A stretch of DNA of 64,000 nucleotides from Asterias rubens (taxonomy: Eukaryota), in assembly GCF_902459465.1 (NCBI RefSeq), contig NC_047083.1, positions 3,286,001 to 3,350,000 on the forward strand, written 5' to 3'. The position numbers and the translations under genes were made by a program. Under the pieces are notes generated by a model, which worked only from the letters and a program-made list of their open reading frames with translations, was not told the DNA's origin and searched no databases. This document shows positions 12,612 through 61,710 of the stretch, in pieces; the first letter of the stretch is position 1; every line of letters starts with the position of its first letter.

Positions 12612-13257
12612 CTCAAGAGAAAGATTATGAACGAATAAAACTAAAACTATTAAAATGAACAAAGATGGCGCTCTGATCGAGTCAAGACGATCATTTTAAT
12701 GGAACGTTACAGAATTGGTAAGAAACAAAAATCGTGAAGATCACAGATTAACATAAAACTTACACGGTCTAATGATGATGATAGTAGAAAACATCCCTTG
12801 AAATATATCTGTCTGAAATGTCATATTGTGTTGAGAAATAAATAATCTTATTTCGTGTTTGGAGTTTATCGCTCAGTGAGCGTTTTATTCATTTTTCCTT
12901 TAACATCGATGTCATGCAAAACATTGTGAATCGGTTTTTCACTATTCTCTCGGGACCCAGATGGCCGATCGATCTCAAACTTCTACAGGTTTGTCTGCTT
13001 ATCTGGTGGATTACATAAAGCGCATACACTGACATCTGACGTCACACTTCGAGACTCGTGAAAACGCCAGAGATTTGCCCCTAGCCCTGGCAAGGTCATT
13101 TTCAAATTTCACCTGAATTCATATGCGGACGACTAGGGCCAATCAAAACACAGATACAGTAGTTCCATGCACGTTTATCCAATGAAATCATTGTATCCAA
13201 TGAAATCATTGTATCCAATGACATCACTTATTCTGAAAAGCAATTACCTGTCTTTAA

Positions 13258-16445: not shown

Positions 16446-19400
16446 TTAAAGTCTTTCGACGCTGTACAGCTTTTCCCGGAGCACACGTATACGAGATCGG
16501 ACTTCGTCCCAGTCAATGTAGCCTCCTTCTAGCAATCGGCCACTTCCACTTTCAACCGTAAAAGAGTTGCGCCCATGCAACAGCCGTCTGTTGTTGAAGG
16601 TTATCACTTCACCTATAATGGAGACAAAGTGTGTGTCTTCATAATAAAAAATAATAGCCCGTTTTTATATAGCGCTTTTCACGCCCGAGCGGTGTCTCAA
16701 AGCCCTTCTGACATTATTACCCCTGGTCACTGGGCCTTAAATCATTATCAGCTCCCTGGGGAGTATACAGCCTGTGCGCAATATATGCGCTACTCGGCTA
16801 AACCAATCACAAGAACCATCTCTGCCCTCACAGGTACCCATTTACCCCTGGGTGGAGAGAAGCTATTATAGTTTAGTGTCTTACTGAGTGACACAAGTGT
16901 CACGACCGGGATTCGAACCCACACTCTGCTGAACAGAAGCATCAGAGCTTGAGTTCGGTGCTCTTATCCACTCGGCAACAGACCGAACTCAAGCTCTGGT
17001 ATTTCTGATCAGCAGAGTGTGGGCCGGGTCTGACCTTGGGTGTGATAAAACGCTACCAAATAATCAACTACTGTTGCATGACTCTATTATTAAATCTGTG
17101 AGTCTTGAGTTTTGAAGTGCAGGAAAATATTGTAAGTTTAAAGCGCCTTGAGCATCACTGAGTGACGGATGAGCGCTATAAGAAGCCTCTCTTCATAACC
17201 GCAGTATTAAGAATTTGTATACACATTGTATTATACTATTCACATCTGCTGCAATTCTTTTAACATAGTTTTTCACTCACATTAATTTTTAGAGTTTAAC
17301 TATTACCAACCCAAAACACACCCTTATGAGAGAGTAATAGGCGCTATAACTACCAAAAGTATACGTTGCCTTTAAAGGGAAGGTACACGTTTGGTAGTTG
17401 TCAAAGACCAGTCTTCTCACTTGGTATATCCCATCATAAGCATAACATAACAAACCTGTGAACATTTGGGCTCAATCAGTCATCGAAGTTGCGAGAAAAT
17501 GATGAAAGAAAAAACACCCTTTTTGGACGAATTTGTGTGTTTTCAGATAGGAATAAAAGACTTCTAGCTAGAAGTCTTTTATTATTTTAGTGAGAAATTA
17601 CCTCTTTCTCAAAAACTACAGTACTTCAGAGGGAGTCGTTTCCCACCACCTTTTATATTAATCAACAGCTCTCCAATGCTCGTAACCAAGTCAGTGTTTA
17701 AGTTAATTTTGTTTTGAGTAACTACCAAACGTGTACCTTCCCTTTAAAACAACTTTGGTTGATGTTGGCGCTTTATAAGTTCCCTTTGATTGATTGAAAA
17801 CAACTTAAAATTTAAATGATAGTGTTCCTTACAAAAAGACCTTTACCTTCAGATAGACGATGATGGACAACATTTTCTGGGAGATAAATGATGCGGTTAA
17901 ACTCTTTAATGGCCCTGTACATGTCAGTCACTCGGTCTACCGGCATTAGCATGTATGAAGCACGTATAGGATCGTTGTAGCGCATGCATAGTTCTCCACG
18001 AAGATCAAAGCTAAGAAAGAATACAATAAAGACATTGGACACTTACGGTAAACAGTATTGTCCAAGGCCCACACTTCGTGTATCACAACTTATATATAAA
18101 ATAACAAACCCTGTGAATATTTAGGTTCAATTGGTCATCGGAGTCGGGAGAAAATGACGGGAAAACATACCCTTGTTTCGTTTCGCCGTGTCATGACATG
18201 TGTTTAAAATAAATCCGTAATTCTCGATATCGAGAATTGATATTGTTTTAATATTTTCTCAAAAGTAAAGCATTTCATGGGATAATATTTCAAGGGAAGT
18301 CTTTCACCATTACCTTCTGTAAACCCTATAAGTTATTTGTAAATCTGTGAACTTTTAATTTGTGTTCTGTTCAGAAAGTGTCCAATAGCTTTAAAGGGAA
18401 TGATACCTTTAAAACTAACAAGCGGAAAGAAGTCGCGGAAGACTTCCGCCCAGCCACGGTAACTTATAAGGGCAGCTAAAAAGTCCAATCGGAACAGCTC
18501 CGCGCTGTAAACCTACCGCAACCGCGCTGTAAAAACGCTATGCAAACGTTGCGGAATTTAAGTCCAGGGCCTAGCTGTAAGTAGAAAATACTGCTTACAA
18601 TTTTTCATCAGCTTTTAAAGCAGAAAAGAGCAGACACCAGTCGCAAACTGTAAATGCGACATGGTAGTTTGACTGGTAACCTTATTCAGATAATCATAAT
18701 GTTGTTGTGCTTAGCTATTTTTTGTGCCTAAGCAGCTCTATGACATTGGACCCAGTTCGGAACGCACGGTAGAATTACACCAAAGTCAGTTACAGTAACG
18801 TTTCGTGTGGCACTGGCAGTGGTAAAAGAAAGTCCATTGAGAACAAAACTTACTCAATGTTTGGTCGAGCAAACTTCATATGAAACGGGTACCTATCAAT
18901 TGCAGCAGATCTTATATCCTTTACACCAAAGCCAGTTACAGTAACGTTCCGTGTGGCACTGGCAGTGGTAAAAGAAAGTCCATTGAGAACAAAACTTACT
19001 CAATGTTTGGTCGAGCAAACTTCATATGAAACGGGTACCTATCAATTGCAGCAGATCTTATATCCTTTGCACCAAAGCCAGTTACAGTAACGTTCCGTGT
19101 GGCACTGGCAGTGGTAAAAGAAAGTCCATTGAGAACAAAACTTACTCAATGTTTGGTCGAGCAAACTTCATATGAAACGGGTACCTATCAATTGCAGCAG
19201 ATCTTATATCCTTTACACCAAAGCCAGTTTACAGTAACGTTCCGTGTGGCACTGGCAGTGGTAAAAGAAAGTCCATTGAGAACAAGGCTTTAAACTTACT
19301 CAATGATTGGCCGAGCAAGCTTCATATGAAACGGGTACCTATCTGTTGCCGCATTCTTGTAATCGACAGGCACTGTGCTAAGCATCTTGTAGAGATCTGG

Positions 19401-28800: not shown

Positions 28801-30542
28801 CCATTTCTCACTCAAATAATAAAAGTTCAGCTGAAGCCCAATACTTTTTAAATAGGCGGCTAGGCATCCCTAACTAACCGATTTGGCTTTTGTCTTGATT
28901 ATTACAGATCCAGATGCTTCACTGTATTGAGCAGGCAGACTGCGCTGGAGGTCAGAATCAGTTTGTAGATGGTCTCAATGTATCACTCCAGGTCAAGAAG
29001 GAGTTTCCCGATACTTACAAATTCCTTAGAACACACGAACTGGATTTCAGAGATGCTGGTGTGGACTACCGAACGTACCACATGAAGTATAGAAGACCCG
29101 TCATTGAGTATGTACATTATTTCATTCAGCGTGTTCTAATTAATTGGAACCCCTCCGTGATTTACACCCGTTTTTAGACAGGCGCTCCAGGAGTCGCGCT
29201 GAAAAAAATTATGGCTTAAACAGGCATAGAAGTCGACATATTGATCGACTGTTGCGGTCGTTCGGAACATTCATGTGTGAAACCAAAACTTAGTTGGGTC
29301 GACCAACTAGAGTCGCTTCTAATCTACATGTAGTTGGGTCGGCATGACTCTGGCGAGCCTAGCTGAAGCGGACTTGACACTGCCGCGAGCAACTGGCATC
29401 CTCTTCTCATGAATTTAGTTATGGAGAGAATTGATACGCTTCAGAAACTTAATGTAAGATATGAGCAGCCAGGGCAAGGTCGATTACCCGCTGGATTTTT
29501 GAATTCATAGACTGATCCGCTGTCTTAAGGGAATTCTCCATAGACGTACACATGCGAGCCTTGTGATGAAGATCAGGGTTAAAACAAAGTTAGGTCCCCA
29601 AAACAAACTATCTTAGATAATGAGATTGTCCATTTTAGGATATCAACTCACGCAGGGCATTGTACTATTGAGAAAACCATTAGGCATGTATAACGACTCA
29701 GTGTCATCAGCCTTCGCAAGATATTTTTTTAAACAACTCTCACGTGCATGAATGTTATGCAGGCACGACAAGTACGGTGATTTTCTGTGTGTAAATTACA
29801 ACGACCACGTGAGGGCGCCCTACATGAGTCTTCCGGTGGAGAAAGTGACTGAGATGTACAAGGCCATCAAGATTTTCAATCAAGTCATGTATCGACCAGG
29901 TAACTTCGTTCAGCATCGGCTTGCTGCAGGTACGTAGATTAGACAATAAAAAACACATGACCATCCACACCCCTAAGAGTTTCCCCATGTATGCCTGGAG
30001 GTCGAGAAGCAATTATGGTTAAGTTATTTTTTGTTCAGCAGCATGTGGGGTGTCGTGGCCTAGCGGTTAAGAGCACCGGACTCAAGCTCTTGTGTTTCTA
30101 ATCAGCAGAGTGGGGGTTCGAATCCCCAGCCGTGACATTTGTGTCCTTGAGCAAGACACTTTTAACCATTGCTTCGTCCTTCGGATGTTTTAACGGCTTA
30201 AAAGCCGTTGGCCCCGTGTGTTGAGTAACGCACGTAACAGCACGTGGTGCAAATTTAAACGTAGTCACACTTTCCATGGAGGAAATAATGTATGTTACAG
30301 CGCAAGTATAGCGTCACTACTGAGTTACAGATAAAAAGCCACTTTTAGTATTGTTTTCATATTTTTCTTTGCCAGGTGAAATAGCAACTTTCAACAACGG
30401 TCGAGTTCTTCATGGCCGGAGTGGCTTCACCATCACGAAGGCCGGCAACCGACATCTCGAGGGCACCTACTTTGACTGGGACGAAACGTATTCACGCATG
30501 CGTATTATTCGAGAGAAGCTATTTGGTGATGAGCGTCTTTAG
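25886..30542 (+). CDS. BBOX1: Gamma-butyrobetaine dioxygenase-like paralogue B with a long basic N-terminal extension
   Basis: Exons 25886-26682, 27900-28005, 28908-29107, 29763-29929, 30376-30542. WLRDNCRCSQC...WPDGH, HIDLPYY, VLHGRS, RHLEGTYFDWD. Confidence 0.92.
30046..30320 (+). mobile_element. tRNA-derived SINE; related pieces at ~61290-61432 (-), ~28540-28720 (-) and ~24990-25130 (tail)
   Basis: A box TGGCCTAGCGG, B box GGTTCGAATCC, followed by CCTTGAGCAAGACACT. Confidence 0.8.
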
Positions 30543-47100: not shown

Positions 47101-48122
47101 TGACAAACATTGTGCTTAAATTAAAGGAACACATTGCATGCCTTAAATCAGTCGAGTTGGTCTCAGAAAAGCGTTTTCAACCGTTTGTTTTAAAATGCAT
47201 AATGATTAGAAAGATATTTTAAAAGTAGAATACAATGATCCACACAAACATGCCTCGAAATTGCACCGTTTTCCTGTTATCTCGTCGACTAACACGGTCG
47301 GCCATTTATGGGAGTCCCATAAATGGCCGACCGTGTCAGTTCGCAAAGTAAAAGGAAAACCACGCAATTTCGAGACATATTTGTGTTGATCATTGTATTC
47401 TACTTTTAAAACATCTTTCTAACCATATGCATTTTATAACAAACGGTTGAAAACGCTTCTCAAAGACCAACTCGACCGATCCAAGGCAACGAAAGACCAA
47501 CTCGACCGATCCAAGGCAACGTGTTCCTTTAATGTTCATAGGCGTGTTGTTTTATGCATGTTGGGATACAACAATTTGAGGATACTGATCTTTTACAATA
47601 CAACAGTATACCGTGTCTCATTATGGGTTTAAATAAAGCTATCGGTACCTTTTATGTACATTAATTTGCGATTAAATTAAAAAAATCCTATACAAATTTT
47701 CCGAGCATGCAGAGCGCCGCCTTTTTTCCGTATTAGAATACTTCTTGTTCCATTCGTTTATAATGTTTTATTCGAGGTACACCAAATCTGATGAATTTCA
47801 TCGCATCACTTACAATGACCAGGCGAGGGCGCCCTCTATGACTCTACCAGTGGAGAAGGTGACTGAGATGTACAACGCTATCAAGATTTTCAATCAAGTC
47901 ATGTATCGACCAGAAAATCTCGTTCAACACCGGCTCATTGCAGGTAGGTGGGTATACAAGCAGGAAGAGTAACGATGAGAAGCCCCGTAGACTTGACCCA
48001 AACCCCAATCCCGTGCCATGCCATAGCTAGAAAACTATTACTAAATAATATAATAATAATAATAATAATAATAATAAGACGTGTAATGCGCACATATCCA
48101 CCCTGCTGGGTGTTCAATGCGC

Positions 48123-48157
<35 letters not shown>

Positions 48158-49569
48158 ATAACACAAAGAAAAACAGACACAACAAAATTAATCCTTTAAA
48201 TAAGATGTTTTGAGAAGAGACTTGAATTTTTCAGTACAAAGACAAGATCGAAGATTAAGTGGTAGAGAGTTCCAGATGCGTGGCGCGGCTGAAGAAAAAG
48301 ACATGTCACCCCATGAAGGTCCAGACTTGGGTTCAATGAGGAGAGAGATGGAACTTGATCGAAGATTCCTTGATTCCTTATTGTCTTATGCATGCATTCT
48401 CCAACCTGGTCCGCACTCTTTGACGGCTTGTTTGCTAGTAATGCAGGACGTTTCACACCGCACGAGAAGGATGACTTGAATCAAGTCTAGAAGCCCCGTA
48501 AAGGAAAGTGCACGTTTCGAAATAACTGATGAAACCAAAAGATCCATGGTTTCGAGAAAAGCTCTAATATCGTCAGACCGGTGGCGCAAATTGCGCTGCG
48601 GTGTCCATTACAAGTCTACGCCAACCATCTCTATCCGCTGCTGATCTTGATGCAGCGGCCATCCCTGTCATGTAAACAAACTAAGGTACTTCATTAACCT
48701 GCTCCTGGTCAACTCCCACCTGCTCCTAAAATCCTCATTGGTGGACAAGAACTTAAAAACGTGGTGCACTTTGCCTATCTCGGCAGTCAACTTTCCCAGA
48801 AAGCCAACATCTCAGAAGTGCACGCGTTTATAATATCGTGTTGCTGACTGTACTTCTCGTGCATTTGTATAGCGCGTTTAATAGACCGATCCAGTAGGCG
48901 CCGCCCACGACGCACGTGTGAGCAAGAACACGTGGAGCTCTCCATGCTTTCTGCACAACTCTGCCGCGCGCGCCAAGATACGCGCACGCATGTCGGACCT
49001 TAGTGTCGGACCTTCGTTGCGTTGTGATTTCCTCAGTGCGAAGTGCTATGATTGCGCACATGACGTCATTGACCGCATGCTGTGATGACGTAAAGCGCAT
49101 GGTACGAGCTGCGCGCAACTCTCAGCCAATGATAGCCGTTCACTCGTGCACGCTTCATTTACAATGGCAGCAAATGCAAGAGAATAATTGTTTTTGCTAG
49201 CTCTCTTTGCAACATAAACTTCGGAATGCTAGGTGGCGGCAGACTTACCGGGTAATGTTCATTGTCGATTTAGTTCAGAGAGGACGCACATAATCCCGAG
49301 AGCAATGAATTTACCCGGTATGTTTGCTGCCAACTAGCATCTCAAAAGCCCCTCGTTACCGTATTATTATTGATTGTATTTTTGTTTTCTTTTAATTAAC
49401 AGGTCAGATAGCTACTTTCCACAACACTCGTGTCCTACATGGTAGAAGTGCCTTTAAAGTAGCAGAAGCTGGCCGGCGACATCTTGAATGTGGGTACATT
49501 GATTGGGACGAGGCTCATTCACGCATGCGTGTTCTTCGAGAGAAGCTTTTTGGCGACAAACGTCTTTAA
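44192..49569 (+). CDS. BBOX1: Gamma-butyrobetaine dioxygenase-like paralogue C; true N-terminus uncertain
   Basis: Exons 44192-44727, 45227-45332, 46505-46704, 47777-47943, 49403-49569, phases consistent. HTDLPYY, VLHGRS, RHLECGYIDWD. Confidence 0.88.
47125..47528. mobile_element. Kolobok-type MITE family D (TIR AGGAACACGTTGCC); other copies at ~23609-23986, ~24338-24681 and 32031-32403
   Basis: TTAA-flanked TIRs; internal hairpin ATGGGAGTC...CCCAT. Confidence 0.85.
48045..48590 (-). mobile_element. L2-clade LINE 3' fragment with (ATT)n tail
   Basis: The - strand encodes WGDMSFSSAAPRIWNSLPLNLRSCLCTEKFKSLLKT, typical of an L2/CR1 ORF2 C-terminus. Confidence 0.8.
48665..48810 (+). mobile_element. 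RTE-clade LINE reverse-transcriptase fragment
   Basis: KTKVLH*PAPG..PKILIGGQELKNVVHFAYLGSQLSQKANISEV. Confidence 0.7.
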
Positions 49570-52158: not shown

Positions 52159-53598
52159 AACTGTGCGCACACTTTTATTATCAAGCCGTTCTAGACTTGG
52201 TTCAACACCCCTCCCGAAACTAATAATCTTCCCATGATCCATCGTTAAAAGAGGGCGCACTCTCATCAAAACAGATGTTTCTCAGGGTGATGGGGGTTCA
52301 AGGCTGATGGCGCCCTCTATTGGCAACTCTATCAGCGTGATACATGTATATGCGAGTAAAGCTTTTTGGAAAATCAACAGGAGCGTCTTGAACCAAGACT
52401 AGCATATTGGACGGCTAGCAAGCTTTTAGTGGATTGGGTCCTACTGAACAGTGCAGGATCCAATAATTTTGAAAAGGAATAACATGGAGATAACAGGTGT
52501 TAGTTGCAAGATGAAAGGATGTTTTTATTTAGCTTCTTTCTTCACTGGAGCTTTCCCATGAAGGTACGAACACCATGCCTGACGTACTATTTTAATAATG
52601 CAACCATCATTAAACTAAAGCCAACAGGGCCAAAATTATGGCACTGCTGCTGACGGTTAATATATGTGCTCAGAACCATTGACAAAATAAAATAAAAAAA
52701 ACATGATAAAGAGAGTGCTGTGGCACATAATTTGTAGCGCCATGAATTGGTGCTCAGTTTTACAAAGACAAAGAGTAAAATACGTAAAATTACATTAAAA
52801 ACATCAATACTTATTATAACATGAATATTAATACATAAACTGTAGCATTTCTACTGTGTGCAGTGCGAGTCGTATGACAAAAAGGCAGGAGATGCAATTC
52901 ATTATACATGTAATAACTTCATTTTAGCTTGTTACAAAACAAATGAGCTATTTTTCATGCATGTCTGGAAATTTACACTCAGCAGCCAGTGATTTAGCGC
53001 GAGGCCAGTGAACTTAAAGACCGGACAACTCAGGAGTTCTTGTGTTATTGAGTAATAATACCCAACACCCATTTTCAATTGATCTACTCACTGTGTTTCT
53101 AGTCTTGTGAAGGCTTTGAGCTACAAAGCCCTGCAGTTTTGTGGTTGTTTTTCCCAAGTTCAAGCCTTGCCATAACACATTGTATACTTTGTACCTATGC
53201 ATTTTGTATCATTGATGCAAAACATGTGCCATGGCAGCGAAAAGGGGAGGATGGTTAAAAGCCAAAATATTTAAGTAAAAGGGGCTGTGTTATCATGATA
53301 AAAGCAGGCCAGTGGAGGAACATAGAATTTGATGAATTATCAGTCCGCTACTGCATGCACTTGCTCTCCCTCAGTACCAAATCTACGGAGGGTAAGCGCT
53401 GAATTCTGGTGATCGTAAGCGCAGAATTCAGCGTTAAGCAGAGCCATGAAATTGGGCACTGTTATGATCCTGACAGGACAGCCCCTTTAAATTGCTTTAA
53501 ACATCTTGCTTTATCGCTGATTAATCTTTTGATGTGAATCTATCAATGAACACATTTCCTCTAAAGCGCTGGGTCACCTAGTCTCACGTTCAAGCAGT

Positions 53599-56500
53599 CT
53601 AATCACGATCGTATGAGTCTCTTCTTGGAGCTGGACTGTGGTATGACCTGGAACGGCTGGAATGAAGGCAGGTACAAACAGTACGCATAAATTTTCATTG
53701 AAACCTTTAAACCTTTTTTTTCTCCAGTAAACTTGGAGGCAACCAACTGCGCTCCATGCAAAAGGAACACTTGGAATATTTCAATGTATGCATCAGTTCA
53801 CCTCTAATGATATTACATAATCCTTTAATCCTTAGGTCCAAAGACATCGCTCCACCAGGCAATGCACCTCAATGGAAAGCACAATTATAGAACAATAGAC
53901 CCATCTATGAAACATACTAATTACATTCACGCATACATACAGACCCTATTGGTTGGCAAACGCCAAAGAGATATGCACTCAGCAGAGGGGGGGGGGGGGG
54001 GGTCCAGGGGGGTCCCAAGAGCCATGTTTTTTACACTTAAGCCAAATATTGTACATGCTTTCATGGATGTGTACAAGTTATGGGATTCTAGGTGTACATG
54101 TATATGTATTTGGAATTGCTGTAACGTCGATTATGCACGCACAAGCCAATTTCCTGCTAACCGGTGAAATATGCAAGCTGAAACGCAGAATTTCCTGCTT
54201 CCGCAAGCAACGACTATTTGCTTACGGTAAGCAGAGCCATGAGATTGGGCCCAGATGTTTTACCAAGTCTATGTATACATGAGTGTTGGGAAAAACTAAA
54301 TCATGGATTTACAACCTACCTTCGGCTTCGGCTGCGACTACGGCTACGGGAACGATAACTCTTGTAGGAATTATTGCGACGAGTGTCGTAGGGGGACCTG
54401 CAAAAAGACAAAGAGGTACATTATATTCCAACAAAAAAATTATAATAATATTATTGAGAAACAAGGGATCAAATTATGAAAAAGGGTTTTGAGTCACTCT
54501 CGTTATTCAAATTTTTTTTCTAGCTGAGCAGCATTGAGAAGGGAACCGGTCAGAAAAGATTGTACATTTACATGACATTATGGCTGGTGACTTGAAGGAT
54601 TTTGGTACTTTTTCAAAATGTTCACAGATTTGCATTAAACTAACAGGGTTTAAAGATAATGATATTGGAAAGCTTCAAATATTATTTACTAAGGTTCGGT
54701 AGGAAAGAAATTTGTTTTACTCATTTCTCAAAAACTACAGCACCTCAGAAAGTAAAATTTCAAGTGAAGCTTTCTACTATCATTATCTTCAAACTGTGTA
54801 AGTTTAATGTTAATCTGTGGACACTGTGTTTTGTGTTAGGAAAAAGTGCATGACCCTTTAAAGACGATGCTCAGCAACAATTTTCTGTACTTAGCAAGTT
54901 TGTGTGCTTTGCCAGCTCTATGAAACTGACCCCAGGACAAGAACAAAGCTAAGTTATAGAAACAAAACTTTATTAAAAAGGAAGTGAAAGGTCACATTCA
55001 ATAACATTATGTACGCATTCCAATGTCTGCATGGAAGTGCATGGACAAATTTACAAATCTCTAGCTTCATATCATTAAACATACACCTCTTCGCAAATAC
55101 CCATTATGTCATCGCTAACTGTTGAATGAGGTGCATGCTGGTCTAGCTAGGGATCAAACTTAATTGCAAGCTAGACCAGCATGCACATCGTTCCACACCT
55201 ACCGCATTTGTACCAAGTATTTGCGATAAGGTTTATGGTCTAAATTGCCATGTGTATTCAATACCCTCCCAGTGCAAATAATATGGTCTCATCCAAAAAA
55301 TCTTGTTTAATTCTGAGTATAAAATAGGTTTTACACCAATATGTGATACAAATATATCTTTTTTTTTTTAATTAGAAATGTTTGATTACTCAACACTTTC
55401 ACTACCAATTTCTTAATATTCTTTTACACATTCCCGATGAGCGTACCTTACAGTGAGAGCTCATGTAGCAAATACTAAATATCTGCCTCGCAAAGTTGTG
55501 GTAGCCTAGCAGAAAAACCAGAATGCTAGAGGCAAGTAAACTGAGCACCTCGCAGATGTACGCACTTGCGGAAACTAGACGAGTCTGAATGTCTCGCAGT
55601 AAAGCTATCTTAGGCTACTGGTTTGCACTAGATGTGTGATATAACTTGTGGATAGCTTGTGGACAACTAGCATAAACTGGATAGCTTGATGTTGTTGAGT
55701 AGCAAAGGCTAGTGGTTTGAACTAGATGGGAGATATAACTTGTGGATAACTTGTGGGCAAATAGCAGATATTGTTTAGCTTGCCGAGTAGCATAGGCTAG
55801 TGGTTTGAACTTGATGATTGACATGATCTGTGGTAACTTGTGGACAACTAGCAGAAAACGGATAGGTTGCCGAGTAGCAAAGGCTAGTGGTTTGAACTAG
55901 GTGGGTGATACAACTTGTGGACAAATAGCGGAAACCAGATAGTTTGCTGTTGTTCGGTAGCGAAGGCTAGTGGTTTGAACTGGATGGACGAGATAACTCG
56001 TGGACATAATAGCAGAAACCGGATAGCTTTCTGAGCAGCAGAGGCTAGTGGTTTGAACCAGTGGGTTGTCCTAACTTGCCGATACATGAATACATGTAGC
56101 TAGTCGCAGTATTTTACGGCCGCAATGAGAAAGCTTGCAGGAATCAATTCCCCTGCTTAAGAGTTAGTTACGATATCCTGCAAATTAAAGTAAAATAGGT
56201 AGATTTAAGTGTATACAATCATTTAACTAATTGCGGTTTTACCATCCTTGCAGGTAAAACACAAACTAAAAATACTTTGAGATTGAATTGAAGGCCAGTG
56301 ATTTTAGCGTTGTCCCATCTGGTGGTCGACTGATTTAAAATGCAAACAAAAAAGACAAGATCAAAGGAGAGAAAGAGTAATTAGTGAATGAGGCAGGCTA
56401 AAATGGGGGATATCTGTGAAATAAATGCAGGCCGGATACTTCATGGAGGCAAAGAAGGCGATTGCCTCCATGCCCCCTTGTCATTATCTTGGGGCCCTTG

Positions 56501-57512
56501 AAAAGCTCCAGAAGAAATTTAAGATTTCCTCGTAGGGTGCCCTTTACCAAGATGCCTTTGCCCTTCTAAAAACAGGGCATTACACGCTGAAAATGCATCA
56601 TTTAATTAAAGATTACCTGGAGCGAGATCGTCTACGCTTGTCGTGAGAGTTGTGCGGGCAATCTCGTGCATAATGGCCACGTTTGCCGCACTCGTAGCAT
56701 TTATCATCGTTGAAAGAACGACGCTGCTGGAAACGACTGCCGCCACCACGGTCACCACTGTAACTGTAACCGCCACCACCACCACTTGAACGTCTACTGC
56801 CGCCCCCCCTTTCACGATCACGGCCACGACGTTTTTCACCGGTAGCATGCTCGACCTCAATACGTCTCCCACAGAGAGAACTGTTGTTGAATAAAATAAA
56901 ATGTATCTTTATAAGCACTGGAGACTTTTGGTAAACACTTAAAATAACTGTTAGCATAAAAACTCACTCAGTAACCAGCAATGGAGAGCTGTAATAGCAT
57001 AAAACATTGCGGGAAAGAAGTAATTTCTAACTTAAGTATTTAAAAATATGTTTACGATCTAAAAACAATTTTCTCTTTATAGAGACAACATTTATATTCA
57101 TTGCCTTTTTTCAAATTTCTCAAAAACTACAGCACCTGGGCAACCAATATTTCATGGGAAGCTTTCTACCATCATTATCTTCAAACCAAGCAAGTTTAAC
57201 GACAATCTTTGGCCATAGTGTTTTGTGTCCTACAAAAAGTTCTCATAACCCATTGACACTAATTCTTTGTCAATGATATAAACATTATGGGGTCTGAACA
57301 TACGTGTCATTGAGTCCTCTGATGGCTTGGCTGGCATCCCCAGGGTTTTCAAATTCGACGAAGGCAAAGCCTGGCGGATTCCTAGCGACCCAAACATTTG
57401 TCAATGCTCCGTAGGTACTGAATGAATCTTCGATGTCACGGCGATTGGCATCGTCTCCAAGGTTACCAACGTACACCTTGCAGGAAAGCGTTGAATCTCC
57501 ATAGCGTGACAT
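53599..57512 (-). CDS. SRSF7: Serine/arginine-rich splicing factor 7-like (RRM + CCHC Zn knuckle + RS domain)
   Basis: Exons 57304-57512, 56617-56880, 54320-54397, 53599-53656; all introns phase 2. [49 protein letters not shown]. An acceptor at 57526 before the ATG implies an upstream non-coding exon (donor AAG/GTAAGG at 59109). Confidence 0.92.
55447..56329 (-). other. Candidate poison (premature-stop) cassette exon in SRSF7-like intron 2
   Basis: CTAAT branch point, long pyrimidine tract and CAG acceptor at 56330; an in-frame TAG follows after about 21 codons. A second acceptor at 56178 gives an immediate TAA. Donor AAG/GTACGC at 55447. Confidence 0.55.
55611..56060 (-). repeat. Six degenerate 78-94 nt units with core GTTCAAACCACTAGCC and a repeated TCCACAAGTT motif
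   Basis: Cores begin (+ strand) at about 55613, 55707, 55795, 55882, 55965 and 56043. Confidence 0.85.
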
Positions 57513-57960
57513 AGTGAAGGAATCTCTGCAATGCAAATAACAAGAGGGTTAAAAAGTACCAATCATTGACATCTTGGGCCAAGACAAATAAATGTGAAAA
57601 AGCAAGATGGCGGCCGACGGTTTTGCTGTTTCGAGATAATTTTTTCATGAGAAAAAAACTTAATTTTTATTCCTAAATATGACCTAAAACTTTCGCAAAT
57701 TATCTTTGAACTGATATTTTACATGCTTCTTTTGTGGATTTTAAATGTATATTGGAGGAGTTGACGGCGAGTTGACAGCGCAAGTGAGTTGACGGCGAGT
57801 TGACGGCAAGTAGTAGGACCCCAAGTGTGGCTAAGGACGGTCGCAATAAATACCGACAATTCACGACCCCTCACGACAACTCACGACAACAATGTTTAAA
57901 TGCACTTTAACAAAACATTTGAACATAAGTCAACCGTTAAATATATACACAAGAGTCATA

Positions 57961-58447
57961 TGCATCTAAATCACTTTTAAACTGTTGAAAATTTTGTTCT
58001 TTTAACTGTAAAAAAGGTGTTTTTTACCCCGAATTTAGTAGCAAACGGAAATATTCGCCATGTTGTCTTCCGACGTACTTGGACGATTCTATAACACCGC
58101 AGGGGGCATGGGTAATTTCTGAGGGCTGAGTTGTATTTTTTCTTTTTGGTTTTAGCTGCTGTTTTTTTTCTTTCTTGTTAGTAACTAAGCAGACACTCTG
58201 GAATTCAATAAAAGGGAAGATTTAAATATAGTATTTTTAAAAACTCTATGGGGACTATGAGAGGCACATAAAATGGTAAATAATCATCTTGCATATGGTA
58301 TCACCCCTGCGGTGTAATGAAATCGTCCAATTACGTCGAAAGACAACATGGCGGATATTTCCGTTTGCTACTAAATTCGGGTAAAAAACACCTTTTTTAC
58401 AGTTAAAAATACAAATTTTTCAACAGTTTGAAAGTGATTTGGGTGCA
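57961..58447. repeat. Long inverted repeat (~145-bp arms, ~200-bp spacer), MITE-like
   Basis: 57961-58105 is the reverse complement of about 58304-58447. Confidence 0.85.
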
Positions 58448-59108
58448 TCCAAATTTGTTGGAATCTTAATTAATTATTTATTAACAAAACACAATTCCAG
58501 CTAACCAAAAGGATAACTTTCCATATGGCGCCACGGACAACTTTCCGTATGGCGCCACCACTTTTTCACTCATTTTTACAAAAAGGGATATCTCATTGAG
58601 GTAAATAAGATACTATATTATTTCATATCGAATGAAAAAGTGGTGGCGCCATACGGAAACTTTTCCGCCCGGTTTGAAAAAAAGGGATATCTCATTGAGG
58701 TAAATTAGATACTATTTTTTATTTCATTTTGAATGAAAAAGTGGTGGCGCCATACGGAAACTTTTCCACCCAAAATACACAAAGATTTGTCTATAAATAA
58801 AAAGAAAACCACGATGTAAAAAAGCCACGCTGTAAAAAACCCCAGTCAGGCCTGTTCAAGATCGATAAAAAGCCAAGCGCGCATACGAAGTTGATTTGGC
58901 TTTTTCACATCCAAGTCCAGTTCAGTATTTTGGGCTAGATTTAATGCTTATTTACACAAATTCCAATGATGCTCATCCCTTAATATTTCTTTATTATTAC
59001 GACAACACACTATACTTTTACAATTCAATGGTAAACTATCAAGGTTAAGCTCGTTTCTATCTTTAGAATTATTATAAAATTTTGACTTTTTCGCTGTCTC
59101 GACCTTAC

Positions 59109-59403
59109 CTTTTCCACACAATCTCCAAAGGTCGCGTGTTGTTGAATGGAAAAGAACAGCCGATTGGAACTGGTGTACTAACCAATACTTCGTTCAGTGA
59201 CTGTATTTTGCCTATTCAAAAATCGATGCTGCCGTGCACCAGCTAAATATAATTTTCGATGTTTCTAAGTTGGCCGCTAGAGGGCGGCATTATTTCACAC
59301 AGTATTAGCTACCAGCAACCTGCGTGCGTGTGGACAAGCTTTTTTTCTGGCAGAAAAAGGGGCCGAGTGTTGCCAATATTCTGTTTAATTCAAAGACCGT
59401 GAG
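59109..59403. promoter_or_regulatory. Candidate bidirectional promoter with the two non-coding first exons of the SR genes
   Basis: Outward-facing canonical donors at 59109 (-) and 59403 (+), a CCAAT box at 59163-59167 (-), and a locally GC-richer segment. Transcription start sites are inferred only. Confidence 0.6.
59274..59287 (+). promoter_or_regulatory. CTCF-like motif CCGCTAGAGGGCGG
   Basis: Matches the CTCF core consensus CCRSYAGRKGGCRS; motif match only. Confidence 0.45.
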
Positions 59404-60652
59404 GTGAGTTGAGGAGTTCTGTAGTATTAAAGATATATGATAGAAGGGATTCAGCTACATAAACTAAGCGTAACCATCCCATGAACAGAAATAAAACCAC
59501 TCGTGAACTGCGTGTTTGTGGTGTCACTGTCGGGGGTTTCTCCATCATTGGGCAATTTGGTTAAATTGTGTTCATGGTGCGCAAACCAATTCTGCACAGT
59601 CTTACAATTGCGCAAAAATTTCGGCATTTTACGCATTACATTGCTGTACTATCAGTAAATTGCGCAAAATATTCCTGCACGATAGGCGAATTTTACAAAC
59701 TGGGCACAATTTCGTAAGGTTTATCGCCATTCAGAACCGCAATGCATTGTGGGAAGGCATGTGGGGCAGTTTGCTATGGGGTGTATGTTGTCACGCACGA
59801 CTCGCGCACGCATCATCTATAGACCTTATATGCATTGACGTCATCCAGCTGCCATCTTTGAGGTCAAACGGTGACGAAACAATCAAAACGCACATAGATT
59901 GACCAATGAACAATCTCCTTTTGACCTCAATGCGGGGGCGCCGAACTGAAATGACGTCATGTGCATAAAATAAGGTCTATATCTTTGTCAACCATTGTCA
60001 ACAGCATCTCTTGATATTTTGCTATTTGCGATATCATGGCACTGCTCATCGCCAAATTCTCGGCTTACAAAGTTACATGTACTAACGTCACGATCATCAT
60101 AAAATAGCCGTCATTAATTAACTGCTAAGAAAGGTACAAGCACTAATTTTCTGGATAGCTGGCTGGGGCCGGTGGGTCATTATATGTAGAATGTAGACGC
60201 TGAGGTAGTAAGTAAGCTTGGAACCTTGACATTGCTCCTGCAAAAGTGCTGATTCCTTGCTTTTTATGCTACAGTACAATGAACAGATGGGCCCTGCACT
60301 ATATTATTTAATCTGTAAAGATCGCGCTATTGACCCATTTCACCTGACGTCATCATCAGAATAATCTTGGATGCGCCATTTTGGTGGTCAATGTCACGGT
60401 GTGTTATTCAGTGAAGTGCGCATTTTTAGGTGACGTGGCGTTTACACGTAAGCCTATTGACCACCAACATGGTGAGCGTGGCAGCAGCCGCCGCGTGTGA
60501 CGCGCGTGCAAGGGGTCTTTAGTTTAACTGGGAATTTTGGCTCGTGTTATTACAATACAAAGCAAGCGCCAAAATTCTGTGAGAGCCATGAAAATAAGCA
60601 ATGGCCAAATTTAATACAACATAGTATTCTTTACAGATTTTAAAATTTCGCC

Positions 60653-61710
60653 ATGGGGAGATACAGCAGTGATGACGATAATAATAGTGATGACGAACGG
60701 GAGCGTACTCGCATCTACATTGGTGACATCAACTCGGAGACGACCCGGACCGATCTGGAGAGAATTTTCAAGAAGTTTGGCTCGCTGTTTGAGGTCTGGC
60801 TTGCCCGTTACCCACCGCTGTTTGCGTTTGTCGCCTTCAAGAAAAGGCGAGATGCTGAGGATGCTGTCCGTGAGATGAACGGGGAGTAAGTTGAGAATGT
60901 TATGCCTATGTCTTAATCATAATAATAATAAAAATGGCTTTCTTGTAAAGCGAGCATATCTGTCACTCAGTGGCGATCAAGGTGCTTTAATATACAGTAC
61001 TTTCCTGCTTCATACAACACAGTACATGGCACCATGTGATGGTTTACAAGGTGCTGGGGCGCAACATGCTGCCAATTAAACCAGGAACACCAGGGCCAAC
61101 CCCTGACGTCTCTTTTCGATAAGTGCACTGCCATCAATTTCACCAAACTCTTCCTAACTAAAGATGAATCTTACATGTAGGACTTAGGACAAGCTTATTT
61201 CCGTATCCATGTTGGGACACAATGGACCCATCCTAAGTAAGAACGAGTTACTCGTCCTAACTCGAGATAGGATTAATCCTAGCACTTCGTGAAACAAATG
61301 GGCTGCTGGGCTACACAACACACGGGACCAACGGCTTTACAGGCCAACTCAAGGATGAAGCATCATGGTTAAGTTTCTTGGTTAAGGACACAAGTGTCAC
61401 GACTGGGCCGAACCCACACTCTGCTGATCAGACTTTTCTGAGAGAGGGTTTTACAATGGATTTTATTGCTTTGATGAAATCAACCCAAGTGCCTTTTAAA
61501 ACGTCCTCTGTTTTCTCCTACACCCCTCAGAACAATTAATGGGAGTCGAGTACAGGTCAATATCGCTCGTCCTCGTAACCGCGGACGGACCAGCTTTGGT
61601 CGTTCTAGTTTCCACGATCCGGAGATCCGATGCTACCACTGTCAGGAACGAGGGCATATCGCTCGCCATTGCACCAAATTCACATCCGGGTATCGGCGCC
61701 ATTTCAGCAG
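60653..61710 (+). CDS. Second SRSF3/SRSF7-family (Rsf1-like) RRM + Zn-knuckle protein; 3' exons lie beyond the window
   Basis: Exons 60653-60885 (TRIYIGDI..VWLARYPPLFAFVAF..DAEDAVREMNG) and 61531-61710 (SRVQVNIARPR..CYHCQERGHIARHC). Intron positions and phases match the SRSF7-like gene. Acceptor at 60636 before the ATG; non-coding exon donor GAG/GTGAGT at 59403. Confidence 0.88.

What the first reader, a model, noticed from the sequence alone, without database searches (positions are those of the whole stretch)
55447..56329. Candidate SRSF7 poison exon built from tandem CA-rich modules
Seen: strong unused acceptors (56330, 56178) give premature stops, a good donor lies at 55447, and six repeats of GUUCAAACCACUAGCC lie between them with UCCACAAGUU and ACAAC/ACAUC/UCAUC motifs. 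Several cores can fold as CUAGU-UCAAACC-ACUAG hairpins. Known: vertebrate SRSF3 and SRSF7 autoregulate through NMD-targeting exons at a comparable position, and the SRSF3-type RRM prefers (A/U)C(A/U)(A/U)C. Inference: here the sensor may be an expandable repeat of binding sites, so copy number could tune the feedback threshold.
Basis: partly seen in the sequence, partly recalled or inferred. Interest (0 to 1): 0.78.

Follow-up and report, generated by a model that had tools for sequence, protein, structure and literature searches.

The report
Starfish SRSF7-like poison exon with repeats
A starfish splicing-factor gene carries an optional 731-base exon, used in part of its RNA, that stops the protein early; the exon is shared with distant starfish and consists largely of six tandem copies of one conserved element, so it is a further example of a known self-limiting device with an unusual repeat build.

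Summary
On the minus strand lies an SRSF7-like gene (RRM, CCHC zinc knuckle, RS tail; 4 coding exons). Its 2.2-kb intron 2 holds six tandem units of 78-94 nt (55606-56120). The 16-nt core is exact in five units and has two mismatches in the sixth.

RNA contigs from four runs cover 55445-56180 at roughly 3-20% of mRNA depth. The intron just downstream of the 55447 donor has zero depth in three of the runs. A contig from a sister species loses alignment within 2-3 nt of AG|56177 and 55447|GT, the overhang being letters shared with the flanking exons. The exon is therefore 56177-55447 (731 nt), with UAA 7 nt in.

The acceptor and the first ~190 nt align to the same intron of Patiria and Acanthaster (z 18 and 13). 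NCBI's Patiria isoform X1 splices the zinc-knuckle exon onto the homologous exon. Both distant starfish have their own module arrays (150-185 nt), and the sister species has about one extra unit.

Not supported: selected hairpins, and SRSF3/7 motif enrichment beyond base composition. Untested: NMD sensitivity, autoregulation, copy-number tuning. No E2-PE or PE-E3 junction read was displayed.

Verdict: a real, conserved poison-type cassette exon, a new member of a known kind. The repeat-as-sensor idea remains plausible and open. The scan had not found this before on other DNA.

The parts
57304..57512 (-). Coding part of exon 1 of the SRSF7-like gene (ATG at 57512; RRM N-terminal part)
   Evidence: Translation. 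RRM_1 hit 6.5e-16. RNA contig joint 57304>56880 in three runs.
56617..56880 (-). Exon 2: end of RRM, Gly-rich linker, CCHC zinc knuckle, start of RS
   Evidence: zf-CCHC 2.3e-7. 2116-nt mRNA contig X2 record 16.
55447..56177 (-). Alternative cassette (poison) exon, 731 nt, AG|GAUAUC...CUGUAAG|GU
   Evidence: RNA contigs X2 55437-56374, X1 55683-56159 and X6 55445-56180 lie at about 13-23% of mRNA depth; X13 lies at about 3%. There is zero depth at 55281-55417 in X2/X1/X6. The acceptor and 5' part are orthologous to Patiria and Acanthaster.
56168..56170 (-). Premature UAA, third codon of the cassette, 721 nt upstream of the cassette-exon 3 junction
56012..56195 (-). Block conserved across starfish orders: polypyrimidine tract, acceptor, CUGCAAGCU..CUCAUUGCGGCC box, first repeat unit
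   Evidence: Local alignment to Patiria L002 about 10163-10372 (score 75, z 17.9) and to Acanthaster L001 about 8343-8550 (score 62, z 13.4).
55606..56120 (-). Six tandem units of 78-94 nt. Each holds GCUAUCCGGUUUCUGCUA, one or two (U)CCACAAGUU, and the core CUAGUUCAAACCACUAGCC
   Evidence: A 17-column invariant run across units 1-5, P<5e-5 by column shuffling.
55447..55605 (-). Degenerate repeat tail and 5' splice site (AAG|GUACGC); no poly(A) signal nearby
56178..56329 (-).
   Evidence: Depth falls about 10-fold (X1: 72.6 to 6.9) and about 4-fold (X13: 143 to 36.5) upstream of about 56160. X6 has zero depth at 56240-56376. It lies outside the conserved block.
54320..54397 (-). Exon 3 (RS domain)
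   Evidence: Translation. Joint 54320>53656.
53599..53656 (-). Coding part of exon 4 with stop codon TAG 53601-53599

Best explanation
The segment 56177-55447 is a genuine alternative cassette exon of a starfish SRSF7-like gene. It lies between the zinc-knuckle exon and the RS-domain exons.

Shown:
- It is present in RNA at a minority level.
- Its RNA boundaries coincide with AG|56177 and 55447|GU.
- Inclusion puts a UAA 7 nt into the exon, 721 nt upstream of the next exon junction. The product would lack the RS domain and the mRNA has the layout of an NMD target.
- The acceptor and the first ~190 nt are conserved in the same intron of starfish from another order. In Patiria the homologous exon is annotated as spliced to the zinc-knuckle exon.
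- The six ~85-nt units are amplified copies of an element that is single-copy in that conserved part of the Patiria exon.
- The 17-nt core stays invariant in five copies while the rest of the unit has diverged to 74-82% identity.

Inferred:
- The exon works like the poison exons of vertebrate SRSF3/SRSF7. An SR protein (the gene's own product or its head-to-head paralogue) binds the repeated C/A-rich, G-poor elements as a multivalent exonic enhancer.
- When the protein is abundant the exon is included, the mRNA is degraded or yields an inactive protein, and the level falls.
- The number of units would set the sensitivity or steepness of this loop.
For: Gene identity.

Canonical mRNA skips the segment: X2 record 16, joints 57304>56880 and 54320>53656.

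Cassette in RNA:
- Depth is 13.2 versus 79.7 (X2), 72.6 versus 314-549 (X1), 143 versus about 4900-5900 (X13), and 25.2 versus 141-165 (X6).
- The bin 55281-55417 is empty in X2, X1 and X6.
- Other intron contigs in X13 lie at 6-49.
- X6 record 26 (sister species) aligns only from 56180 to 55445. That is the exon plus the 'cag' and 'gu' letters it shares with the flanking exons, with 19 and 26 unaligned letters beyond.

Premature stop and closed frames. No poly(A) signal and no downstream RS ORF.

Conservation:
- z 17.9 and 13.4 for the 5' part.
- Within the 3.9-kb Acanthaster intron, nearly all Acanthaster-Patiria similarity falls inside the homologous exon, including its 3' part.
- Patiria isoform X1 (P0271) ends in a tail encoded at L002:10181-10297, which is the homologous exon start.

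Synteny on both sides: paralogue head-to-head, GBBH/TauD gene convergent.

Array properties:
- Single-copy in transcriptomes, unlike neighbouring intron repeats at depths of thousands, and absent elsewhere in the window.
- Core invariance P<5e-5.
- About 77 nt extra, roughly one unit, in the sister species.
- Independent module arrays in Acanthaster (3 x 176-184 nt) and Patiria (about 5-6 x 150-185 nt).

Literature: SRSF3 autoregulates via its stop-bearing exon 4, and SRSF7 via a poison cassette exon and transcripts carrying repeated SRSF7 motifs (PMC12179342). SRSF3 binds CA-rich/CNYC sequences and SRSF7 binds both GAY and CNYC (PMC9022966). Unproductive splicing of SR genes is widespread and turns over between lineages (PMC4379411).
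Against: - No displayed read or contig spans the E2-cassette or cassette-E3 junction. The joint table was truncated and contigs carry no strand.
- X2's contig runs 197 nt upstream of the acceptor and 10 nt past the donor. X13's contig runs through the donor to 55140. Part of the signal is therefore intron retention.
- Contig depth is a crude measure of inclusion.
- In the window exon, WCWWC is at shuffle expectation (z -0.8), CNYC is depleted (z -3) and GAYGAY is absent.
- Profile searches with the window unit or the valvatid module find no significant match across orders. Homology of the arrays themselves rests on short shared words (CCACAAGU, AGUYCRAACC..CUAG, CUGCRAG) in the same order.
- Between the two close species, mismatches are not visibly rarer in the cores (3 of about 27 seen, about 4 expected). 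Register ambiguity weakens this count.
- No similarity was found in the sea urchin or brittle star intron.
- NMD, protein binding and feedback are all untested.
Confidence: 0.6

Rival explanations
1. The cassette exon is real and conserved, but the tandem array is a neutral minisatellite that expanded inside an exon tolerant of insertions. Copy number has no regulatory meaning, and only the unique 5' block and the splice sites matter.
For: - Known SR-protein words are not enriched beyond composition.
- There is no cross-order profile match of the units.
- The cores are not obviously more conserved than the rest between the two close species.
- Exon length varies freely: 731, about 807, about 1129 and about 1504 nt.
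Against: - The amplified unit derives from a segment conserved across orders.
- The 17-nt core is invariant in five copies while the flanks diverged (P<5e-5).
- Three lineages each keep an array at the same place in the exon.
Confidence: 0.22
2. The repeats act mainly in intron-retaining nuclear transcripts that bind and sequester the SR protein, like the architectural SRSF7 RNAs of vertebrates, rather than through exon inclusion and NMD.
For: X2 and X13 contigs continue from the cassette into flanking intron. Vertebrate SRSF7 transcripts with retained introns carry repeated SRSF7 motifs and build condensates (PMC12179342). Steady-state depth of 13-23% is high for an NMD substrate.
Against: Three runs have zero depth just downstream of the donor, and the sister-species contig stops at both splice sites. 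Patiria's annotated isoform is spliced. No localisation data exist.
Confidence: 0.1
3. The isoform exists to make a truncated RRM + zinc-knuckle protein lacking the RS domain (as with truncated SRSF3), not to destroy the mRNA.
For: The ORF ends 2 codons (window) or 38 codons (Patiria, Acanthaster) into the exon, leaving RRM and zinc knuckle intact.
Against: The tail peptide is not conserved in this species (RIS-stop), so the conservation is at RNA level. Two exon junctions lie far downstream of the stop. There is no poly(A) signal at the exon end.
Confidence: 0.05
4. It is not an exon: intronic transcription noise, an independent non-coding transcript, or DNA carry-over.
For: Contigs have no strand and no junction was displayed. 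Junction words are absent from JGI metagenomes (a weak test).
Against: Coverage is confined to the AG..GT-bounded segment while neighbouring unique intron is empty. The same bounds are seen in a second species. The orthologous exon is annotated in Patiria, and the acceptor is conserved across orders.
Confidence: 0.03

Closest known systems
Vertebrate SRSF3 exon 4 and SRSF7 poison cassette exon (AS-NMD autoregulation)
   Same: Same gene family (RRM, plus zinc knuckle in SRSF7, then RS). A long stop-bearing cassette sits between the RNA-binding part and the RS domain. It is included in a minority of transcripts, flanking intron retention occurs, and it is conserved above intron background (PMC12179342, PMC4379411).
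   Different: No sequence comparison with the vertebrate exons was made, so homology versus independent origin is open. This exon is built largely from 78-94-nt tandem units and changes length between starfish lineages instead of being ultraconserved. It has no second ORF for the RS half. Autoregulation and NMD are not shown here.
Repeated-site splicing enhancers, e.g. the Drosophila doublesex 13-nt repeat element bound by Tra/Tra2/RBP1 (own knowledge), and repeated SRSF7 motifs in SRSF7 architectural RNAs (PMC12179342)
   Same: Several spaced copies of one element inside or next to a regulated exon. In those systems the elements are bound by SR-type proteins of the SRSF3/7 clade.
   Different: Here the units are about 85 nt with three conserved sub-blocks, not a short motif. 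The binder is unknown, and known SRSF3/7 words are not enriched beyond composition.
hnRNP L autoregulation through a CA-rich cluster that controls a poison exon (own knowledge; hnRNP L binding to CA-rich elements is cited in PMC7547044)
   Same: A C/A-rich multi-site cluster coupled to a stop-bearing exon in the binder's own gene.
   Different: Different protein family. That cluster is intronic and made of simple CA repeats, whereas here it is exonic and made of complex units.
Silent intronic minisatellites noted elsewhere in this genome
   Same: Tandem duplication of a piece of gene sequence inside an intron.
   Different: That array showed no use in RNA. This one lies inside a segment present in RNA with splice-site bounds and conserved across orders.

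Membership tests
SRSF3/SRSF7-type SR protein gene | One N-terminal RRM, a CCHC zinc knuckle (SRSF7 type) and a C-terminal RS domain | tested here: met
   RRM_1 6.5e-16 and zf-CCHC 2.3e-7. RS-rich C-terminus in the 202-aa product. Clusters with starfish 'SRSF7-like' proteins at 96/98 support.
Poison (NMD-targeting) cassette exon | Alternatively included exon bounded by AG and GT and present in RNA | tested here: met
   Contig coverage and bounds in four runs and two species, and a spliced ortholog annotated in Patiria. Caveat: no junction-spanning record was displayed for this species.
Poison (NMD-targeting) cassette exon | In-frame stop more than 50-55 nt upstream of a downstream exon-exon junction | tested here: met
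   UAA at 56170-56168, 721 nt before the cassette-E3 junction; a further junction E3-E4 follows.
Poison (NMD-targeting) cassette exon | Isoform stabilised when NMD is blocked | not testable with these tools
   Needs cycloheximide/emetine or UPF1 depletion in starfish cells or embryos.
Autoregulatory SR-gene poison exon | Inclusion promoted by the gene's own protein binding in or near the exon | not testable with these tools
   Motif proxy only: WCWWC z -0.8, CNYC z -3.0, GAYGAY 0 in this exon. WCWWC z 2.9-3.6 in the valvatid exons.
Autoregulatory SR-gene poison exon | Conservation above the surrounding intron | tested here: met
   5' 190 nt z 13-18 versus shuffles. Acanthaster-Patiria similarity within the intron is confined almost wholly to the exon. 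No match in sea urchin or brittle star.
Orthologue of the vertebrate SRSF7/SRSF3 poison exon | Same intron position and detectable sequence homology | not tested
   Position after the zinc-knuckle exon matches what I recall of SRSF7. No vertebrate sequence was compared.
Structured RNA repeat (selected hairpins) | Stable stem with compensatory changes; folding energy below shuffles | tested here: not met
   A 5-bp stem with consensus energy -1.17 kcal/mol, 0 compensatory pairs, broken in 3 of 6 units. Whole-exon z -0.37. No Rfam or tRNA match.
Dispersed transposon-derived repeat / satellite | Many copies elsewhere in the genome or transcriptome | tested here: not met
   The core occurs only in this array within 64 kb. 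Depth is 13-143, versus thousands to hundreds of thousands for neighbouring intron repeats.

The most novel reading that the evidence does not exclude
Starfish SRSF7-like genes carry an ancient poison exon whose sensing part is modular. An ancestral tripartite element (CUGCRAG - CCACAAGU - AGUYCRAACC..CUAG) has been amplified independently in different lineages: 6-7 units of about 85 nt here and in the sister species, 3 to about 6 modules of 150-185 nt in valvatid starfish. Unit number would set the gain or threshold of the SR-protein feedback loop, or the valency of a sequestering nuclear RNA. That would make it a natural copy-number series for how autoregulatory set-points evolve.
Probability: 0.25. 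Interest if true: 0.68.

Novelty: new member of a known kind. Interest (0 to 1): 0.5.

Why it matters
Poison exons of SR genes are a central homeostatic device, but the best-studied ones are vertebrate ultraconserved elements. Those give little natural variation from which to learn what sets the feedback threshold.

Here the same kind of exon has a conserved entry part and a repeat part that differs in unit number and unit type between starfish. It differs even between two species about 4% apart. If the repeats are the binding platform, starfish offer a natural dosage series. They also offer injectable oocytes and embryos in which to test how site number shapes autoregulation.

If the repeats turn out to be neutral, the case would show how much insertion a poison exon can tolerate. 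In both cases it extends unproductive splicing of the SRSF3/7 clade to echinoderms, for which the held literature has no report.

Tried and rejected
- Looking up the two longest ORFs inside the cassette to fetch transcript contigs: not on record.
- Protein word search with exon 2 to find truncated products: nothing. The representative search was swamped by multi-zinc-knuckle proteins but did yield the Acanthaster orthologue.
- Exact junction words (E2|cassette, cassette|E3) in JGI metagenome contigs: none. This is a weak test.
- nhmmer with the window unit against other loci, and with the valvatid module against the window: no significant hits. I therefore do not claim that the arrays are alignable across orders.
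- 3' part of the window cassette against valvatid exons: not significant (z <= 2).
- tRNA/SINE or snoRNA origin, considered because the core resembles a B-box/T-arm: ARAGORN 0 and Rfam 0, and the stem register does not fit a T-arm. Rejected.
- Alternative terminal exon: no poly(A) signal within 60 nt of the exon end. Patiria does have AAUAAA 17 nt before its likely donor, so this is not fully excluded there.
- Split-ORF like vertebrate SRSF7: the native RS frame has a stop 12 nt before exon 3 and no AUG. Rejected.
- Acceptor 56330: no depth step, not conserved. Rejected as the main site.
- Königs et al. 2020 could not be read, so its content is cited through reviews.

Full report
**What is there.** Reading the minus strand and translating gives a four-exon gene:
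- exon 1: ATG at 57512, ends 57304
- exon 2: 56880-56617
- exon 3: 54397-54320
- exon 4: from 53656, TAG at 53601-53599

The 202-aa product has an RRM (6.5e-16), a CCHC zinc knuckle (2.3e-7) and an RS tail. Its nearest relatives among the proteins retrieved are 'SRSF7-like' proteins of the starfish Patiria miniata (62%) and Acanthaster planci (60%). In a tree it is sister to that pair with 96/98 support.

My tree fits a starfish outside Valvatida, but I did not verify the species. The loci are syntenic: an RRM paralogue lies head-to-head upstream and a GBBH/TauD gene lies convergent downstream, both in the window and in Acanthaster.

**The observation.**
- The 2.2-kb intron 2 holds a tandem array (TRF period 83-87).
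It occurs nowhere else in the 64 kb, and none is expected by chance.
- Aligned, there are six units of 78-94 nt (55606-56120) plus a decayed tail. Units 2-6 are 74-82% identical to each other.
- Each unit holds GCUAUCCGGUUUCUGCUA, one or two copies of (U)CCACAAGUU, and CUAGUUCAAACCACUAGCC.
- Both acceptors and the donor are present as described.
- Entry at 56177 gives UAA after two codons. Entry at 56329 gives a stop after twenty.

**Is it an exon?** I laid Logan contigs of four runs on 53500-57600.

The canonical mRNA (X2 record 16, 2116 nt) joins exon 1 to exon 2 and exon 3 to exon 4, and skips the array.

Separate contigs cover the array:

| Run | Contig span | Depth | mRNA depth |
|---|---|---|---|
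| X2 | 55437-56374 | 13.2 | 79.7 |
| X1 | 55683-56159 | 72.6 | 314-549 |
| X13 | 55140-56159 | 143 | about 4900-5900 |

- Other unique intron contigs of X13 lie at 6-49.
- The bin 55281-55417, just past the donor, is empty in X2, X1 and X6.
- Upstream of about 56160, depth falls ten-fold in X1 and four-fold in X13.

The most telling record is X6 record 26, from a sister species whose exons differ by about 3-4%.
- It aligns from 56180 to 55445 only. That is the 56177-55447 segment plus exactly the letters ('cag', 'gu') that the intron ends share with the ends of exon 2 and exon 3.
- 19 and 26 unaligned letters lie beyond those points.
- That pattern is what a spliced cassette contig would give.

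I could not see those loose letters, and no cassette junction appeared in the truncated joint table. The junctions are therefore inferred, not displayed. X2 and X13 also show continuity into flanking intron, so some intron retention accompanies the cassette, as is usual for SR genes (PMC4379411).

There is no poly(A) signal near the exon end and no downstream ORF for the RS half.

**Conservation.** I fetched the orthologous loci of Acanthaster (L001) and Patiria (L002).

- *Shared 5' part.* The window's acceptor region and first ~190 nt of the cassette align colinearly with the same intron of both species (scores 75 and 62; z 17.9 and 13.4 against shuffles). The shared features are the TTGCAG|GAYMTC acceptor, a CUGCRAGCU..CUCAUUGCGGCC box, and one copy of the window's unit (Patiria about 10318-10376).
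- *Annotated isoform.* NCBI's Patiria isoform X1 (P0271, 191 aa) ends in a 38-residue tail encoded at L002:10181-10297. The annotation pipeline therefore splices the zinc-knuckle exon onto the homologous exon. The peptide tail is not kept in the window species (RIS-stop), so the constraint is on the RNA.
- *Conservation island.* Between Acanthaster and Patiria, almost all similarity within the intron lies inside this exon, including its 3' part (score 82).
- *Other arrays.* Both valvatid exons carry their own arrays: three modules of 176-184 nt in Acanthaster and about five to six of 150-185 nt in Patiria. These modules share short words with the window unit, in the same order (CUGCRAG, CCACAAGU, AGUYCRAACC..CUAG). 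Profile searches across orders are not significant, so common descent of the arrays is suggestive only.
- *Outgroups.* The sea urchin and brittle star introns show no similarity. The brittle star has a C/A-rich block with a near copy of the core, which I record only in passing.

**The repeats.**
- The array is single-copy in transcriptomes, whereas neighbouring intron repeats reach depths of thousands. It is therefore not a dispersed element.
- Across units 1-5 a run of 17 columns is invariant, while only 17 of the other 70 columns are (P<5e-5 by column shuffling). This points to constraint or conversion focused on the core.
- The sister species' contig is about 77 nt longer across the array, about one extra unit.
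- Against a simple binding-site story: in this exon WCWWC is at shuffle expectation, CNYC is depleted and GAYGAY is absent. The exon is simply C/A-rich and G-poor relative to its intron.
- The valvatid exons do show WCWWC enrichment (z about 3).
- The proposed hairpin is a 5-bp stem (-1.2 kcal/mol), broken in three units and without compensatory change. The exon as a whole folds no better than shuffles.
- There is no tRNA or Rfam match.

**Mechanism.**

Shown: a minority cassette with an early stop, placed where inclusion removes the RS domain and leaves two junctions far downstream of the stop.

Inferred from the behaviour of SRSF3 exon 4 and the SRSF7 poison cassette (PMC12179342) and from the CA-rich/CNYC preference of this RRM clade (PMC9022966):
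- An SR protein, the gene's own or the neighbouring paralogue, binds the repeated elements as a multivalent enhancer.
- Inclusion rises with protein level.
- The mRNA is lost to NMD.

I put 0.6 on this package. The main rival (0.22) keeps the exon but treats the array as a neutral expansion. Sequestration by intron-retaining RNA (0.10), a functional truncated protein (0.05) and non-exon noise (0.03) follow.

**Novelty and score.** Unproductive splicing of SR genes is known to be widespread and to turn over between lineages (PMC4379411). A poison exon in a starfish SRSF7-like gene is therefore a new member of a known kind, and the held literature has no report of it. The distinctive feature is the tandem-unit build with lineage-specific arrays and a copy-number difference between close species. 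Whether that feature is functional remains open. Interest 0.5.

Noticed in passing
window 57512-61681 and L001:1-6001: A second RRM/zinc-knuckle SR paralogue lies head-to-head with this gene (tblastn hits at 60710-60880 and 61529-61681, + strand). The same arrangement is present in Acanthaster, so the pair is old and could cross-regulate.
   Followed up: partly
window 54185-54321, 54596-54869, 55007-55280, 56377-56650, 56925-57335: Intron stretches with contig depths of thousands to hundreds of thousands in every RNA run, i.e. high-copy dispersed repeats. 54614-54828 is a 64-nt inverted-repeat pair and 55113-55204 a 45-nt palindrome (MITE-like).
   Followed up: no
L004:4280-4814 (Amphiura filiformis SRSF7-like, intron after the zinc-knuckle exon): A C/A-rich block bounded by a good acceptor (ttttcag|G) and donor (CTG|gtgagt). 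It contains TTCAAACCAGCTAG, TCCACAAAG and CCTGCAAG, words close to those of the starfish cassette, so it is a possible brittle-star counterpart. A 103-nt x2 repeat lies downstream at 5189-5398.
   Followed up: partly
L001:10692-10762 and L002:13265-13344: A second small block conserved between Acanthaster and Patiria (71% over 80 nt) deeper in the same intron, outside the cassette. Its meaning is unknown.
   Followed up: no
window 11290-12613, 16449-17997, 29761-30539, 47745-49566: At least four GBBH/TauD-like gene copies on both strands in the window, against a single downstream copy seen in the fetched parts of the Acanthaster and Patiria loci. This suggests a local gene-family expansion.
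   Followed up: no
L002:11668-11673: Patiria has AAUAAA 17 nt before the likely donor of its cassette, so the exon might also serve as an alternative 3' end in that species. The window species has no such signal.
   Followed up: partly
window 56153-56159: C>A at 56153 and a 1-nt deletion at 56159 are seen in several runs and break the contigs there. They are probably common polymorphisms inside the cassette's conserved 5' part.
   Followed up: no
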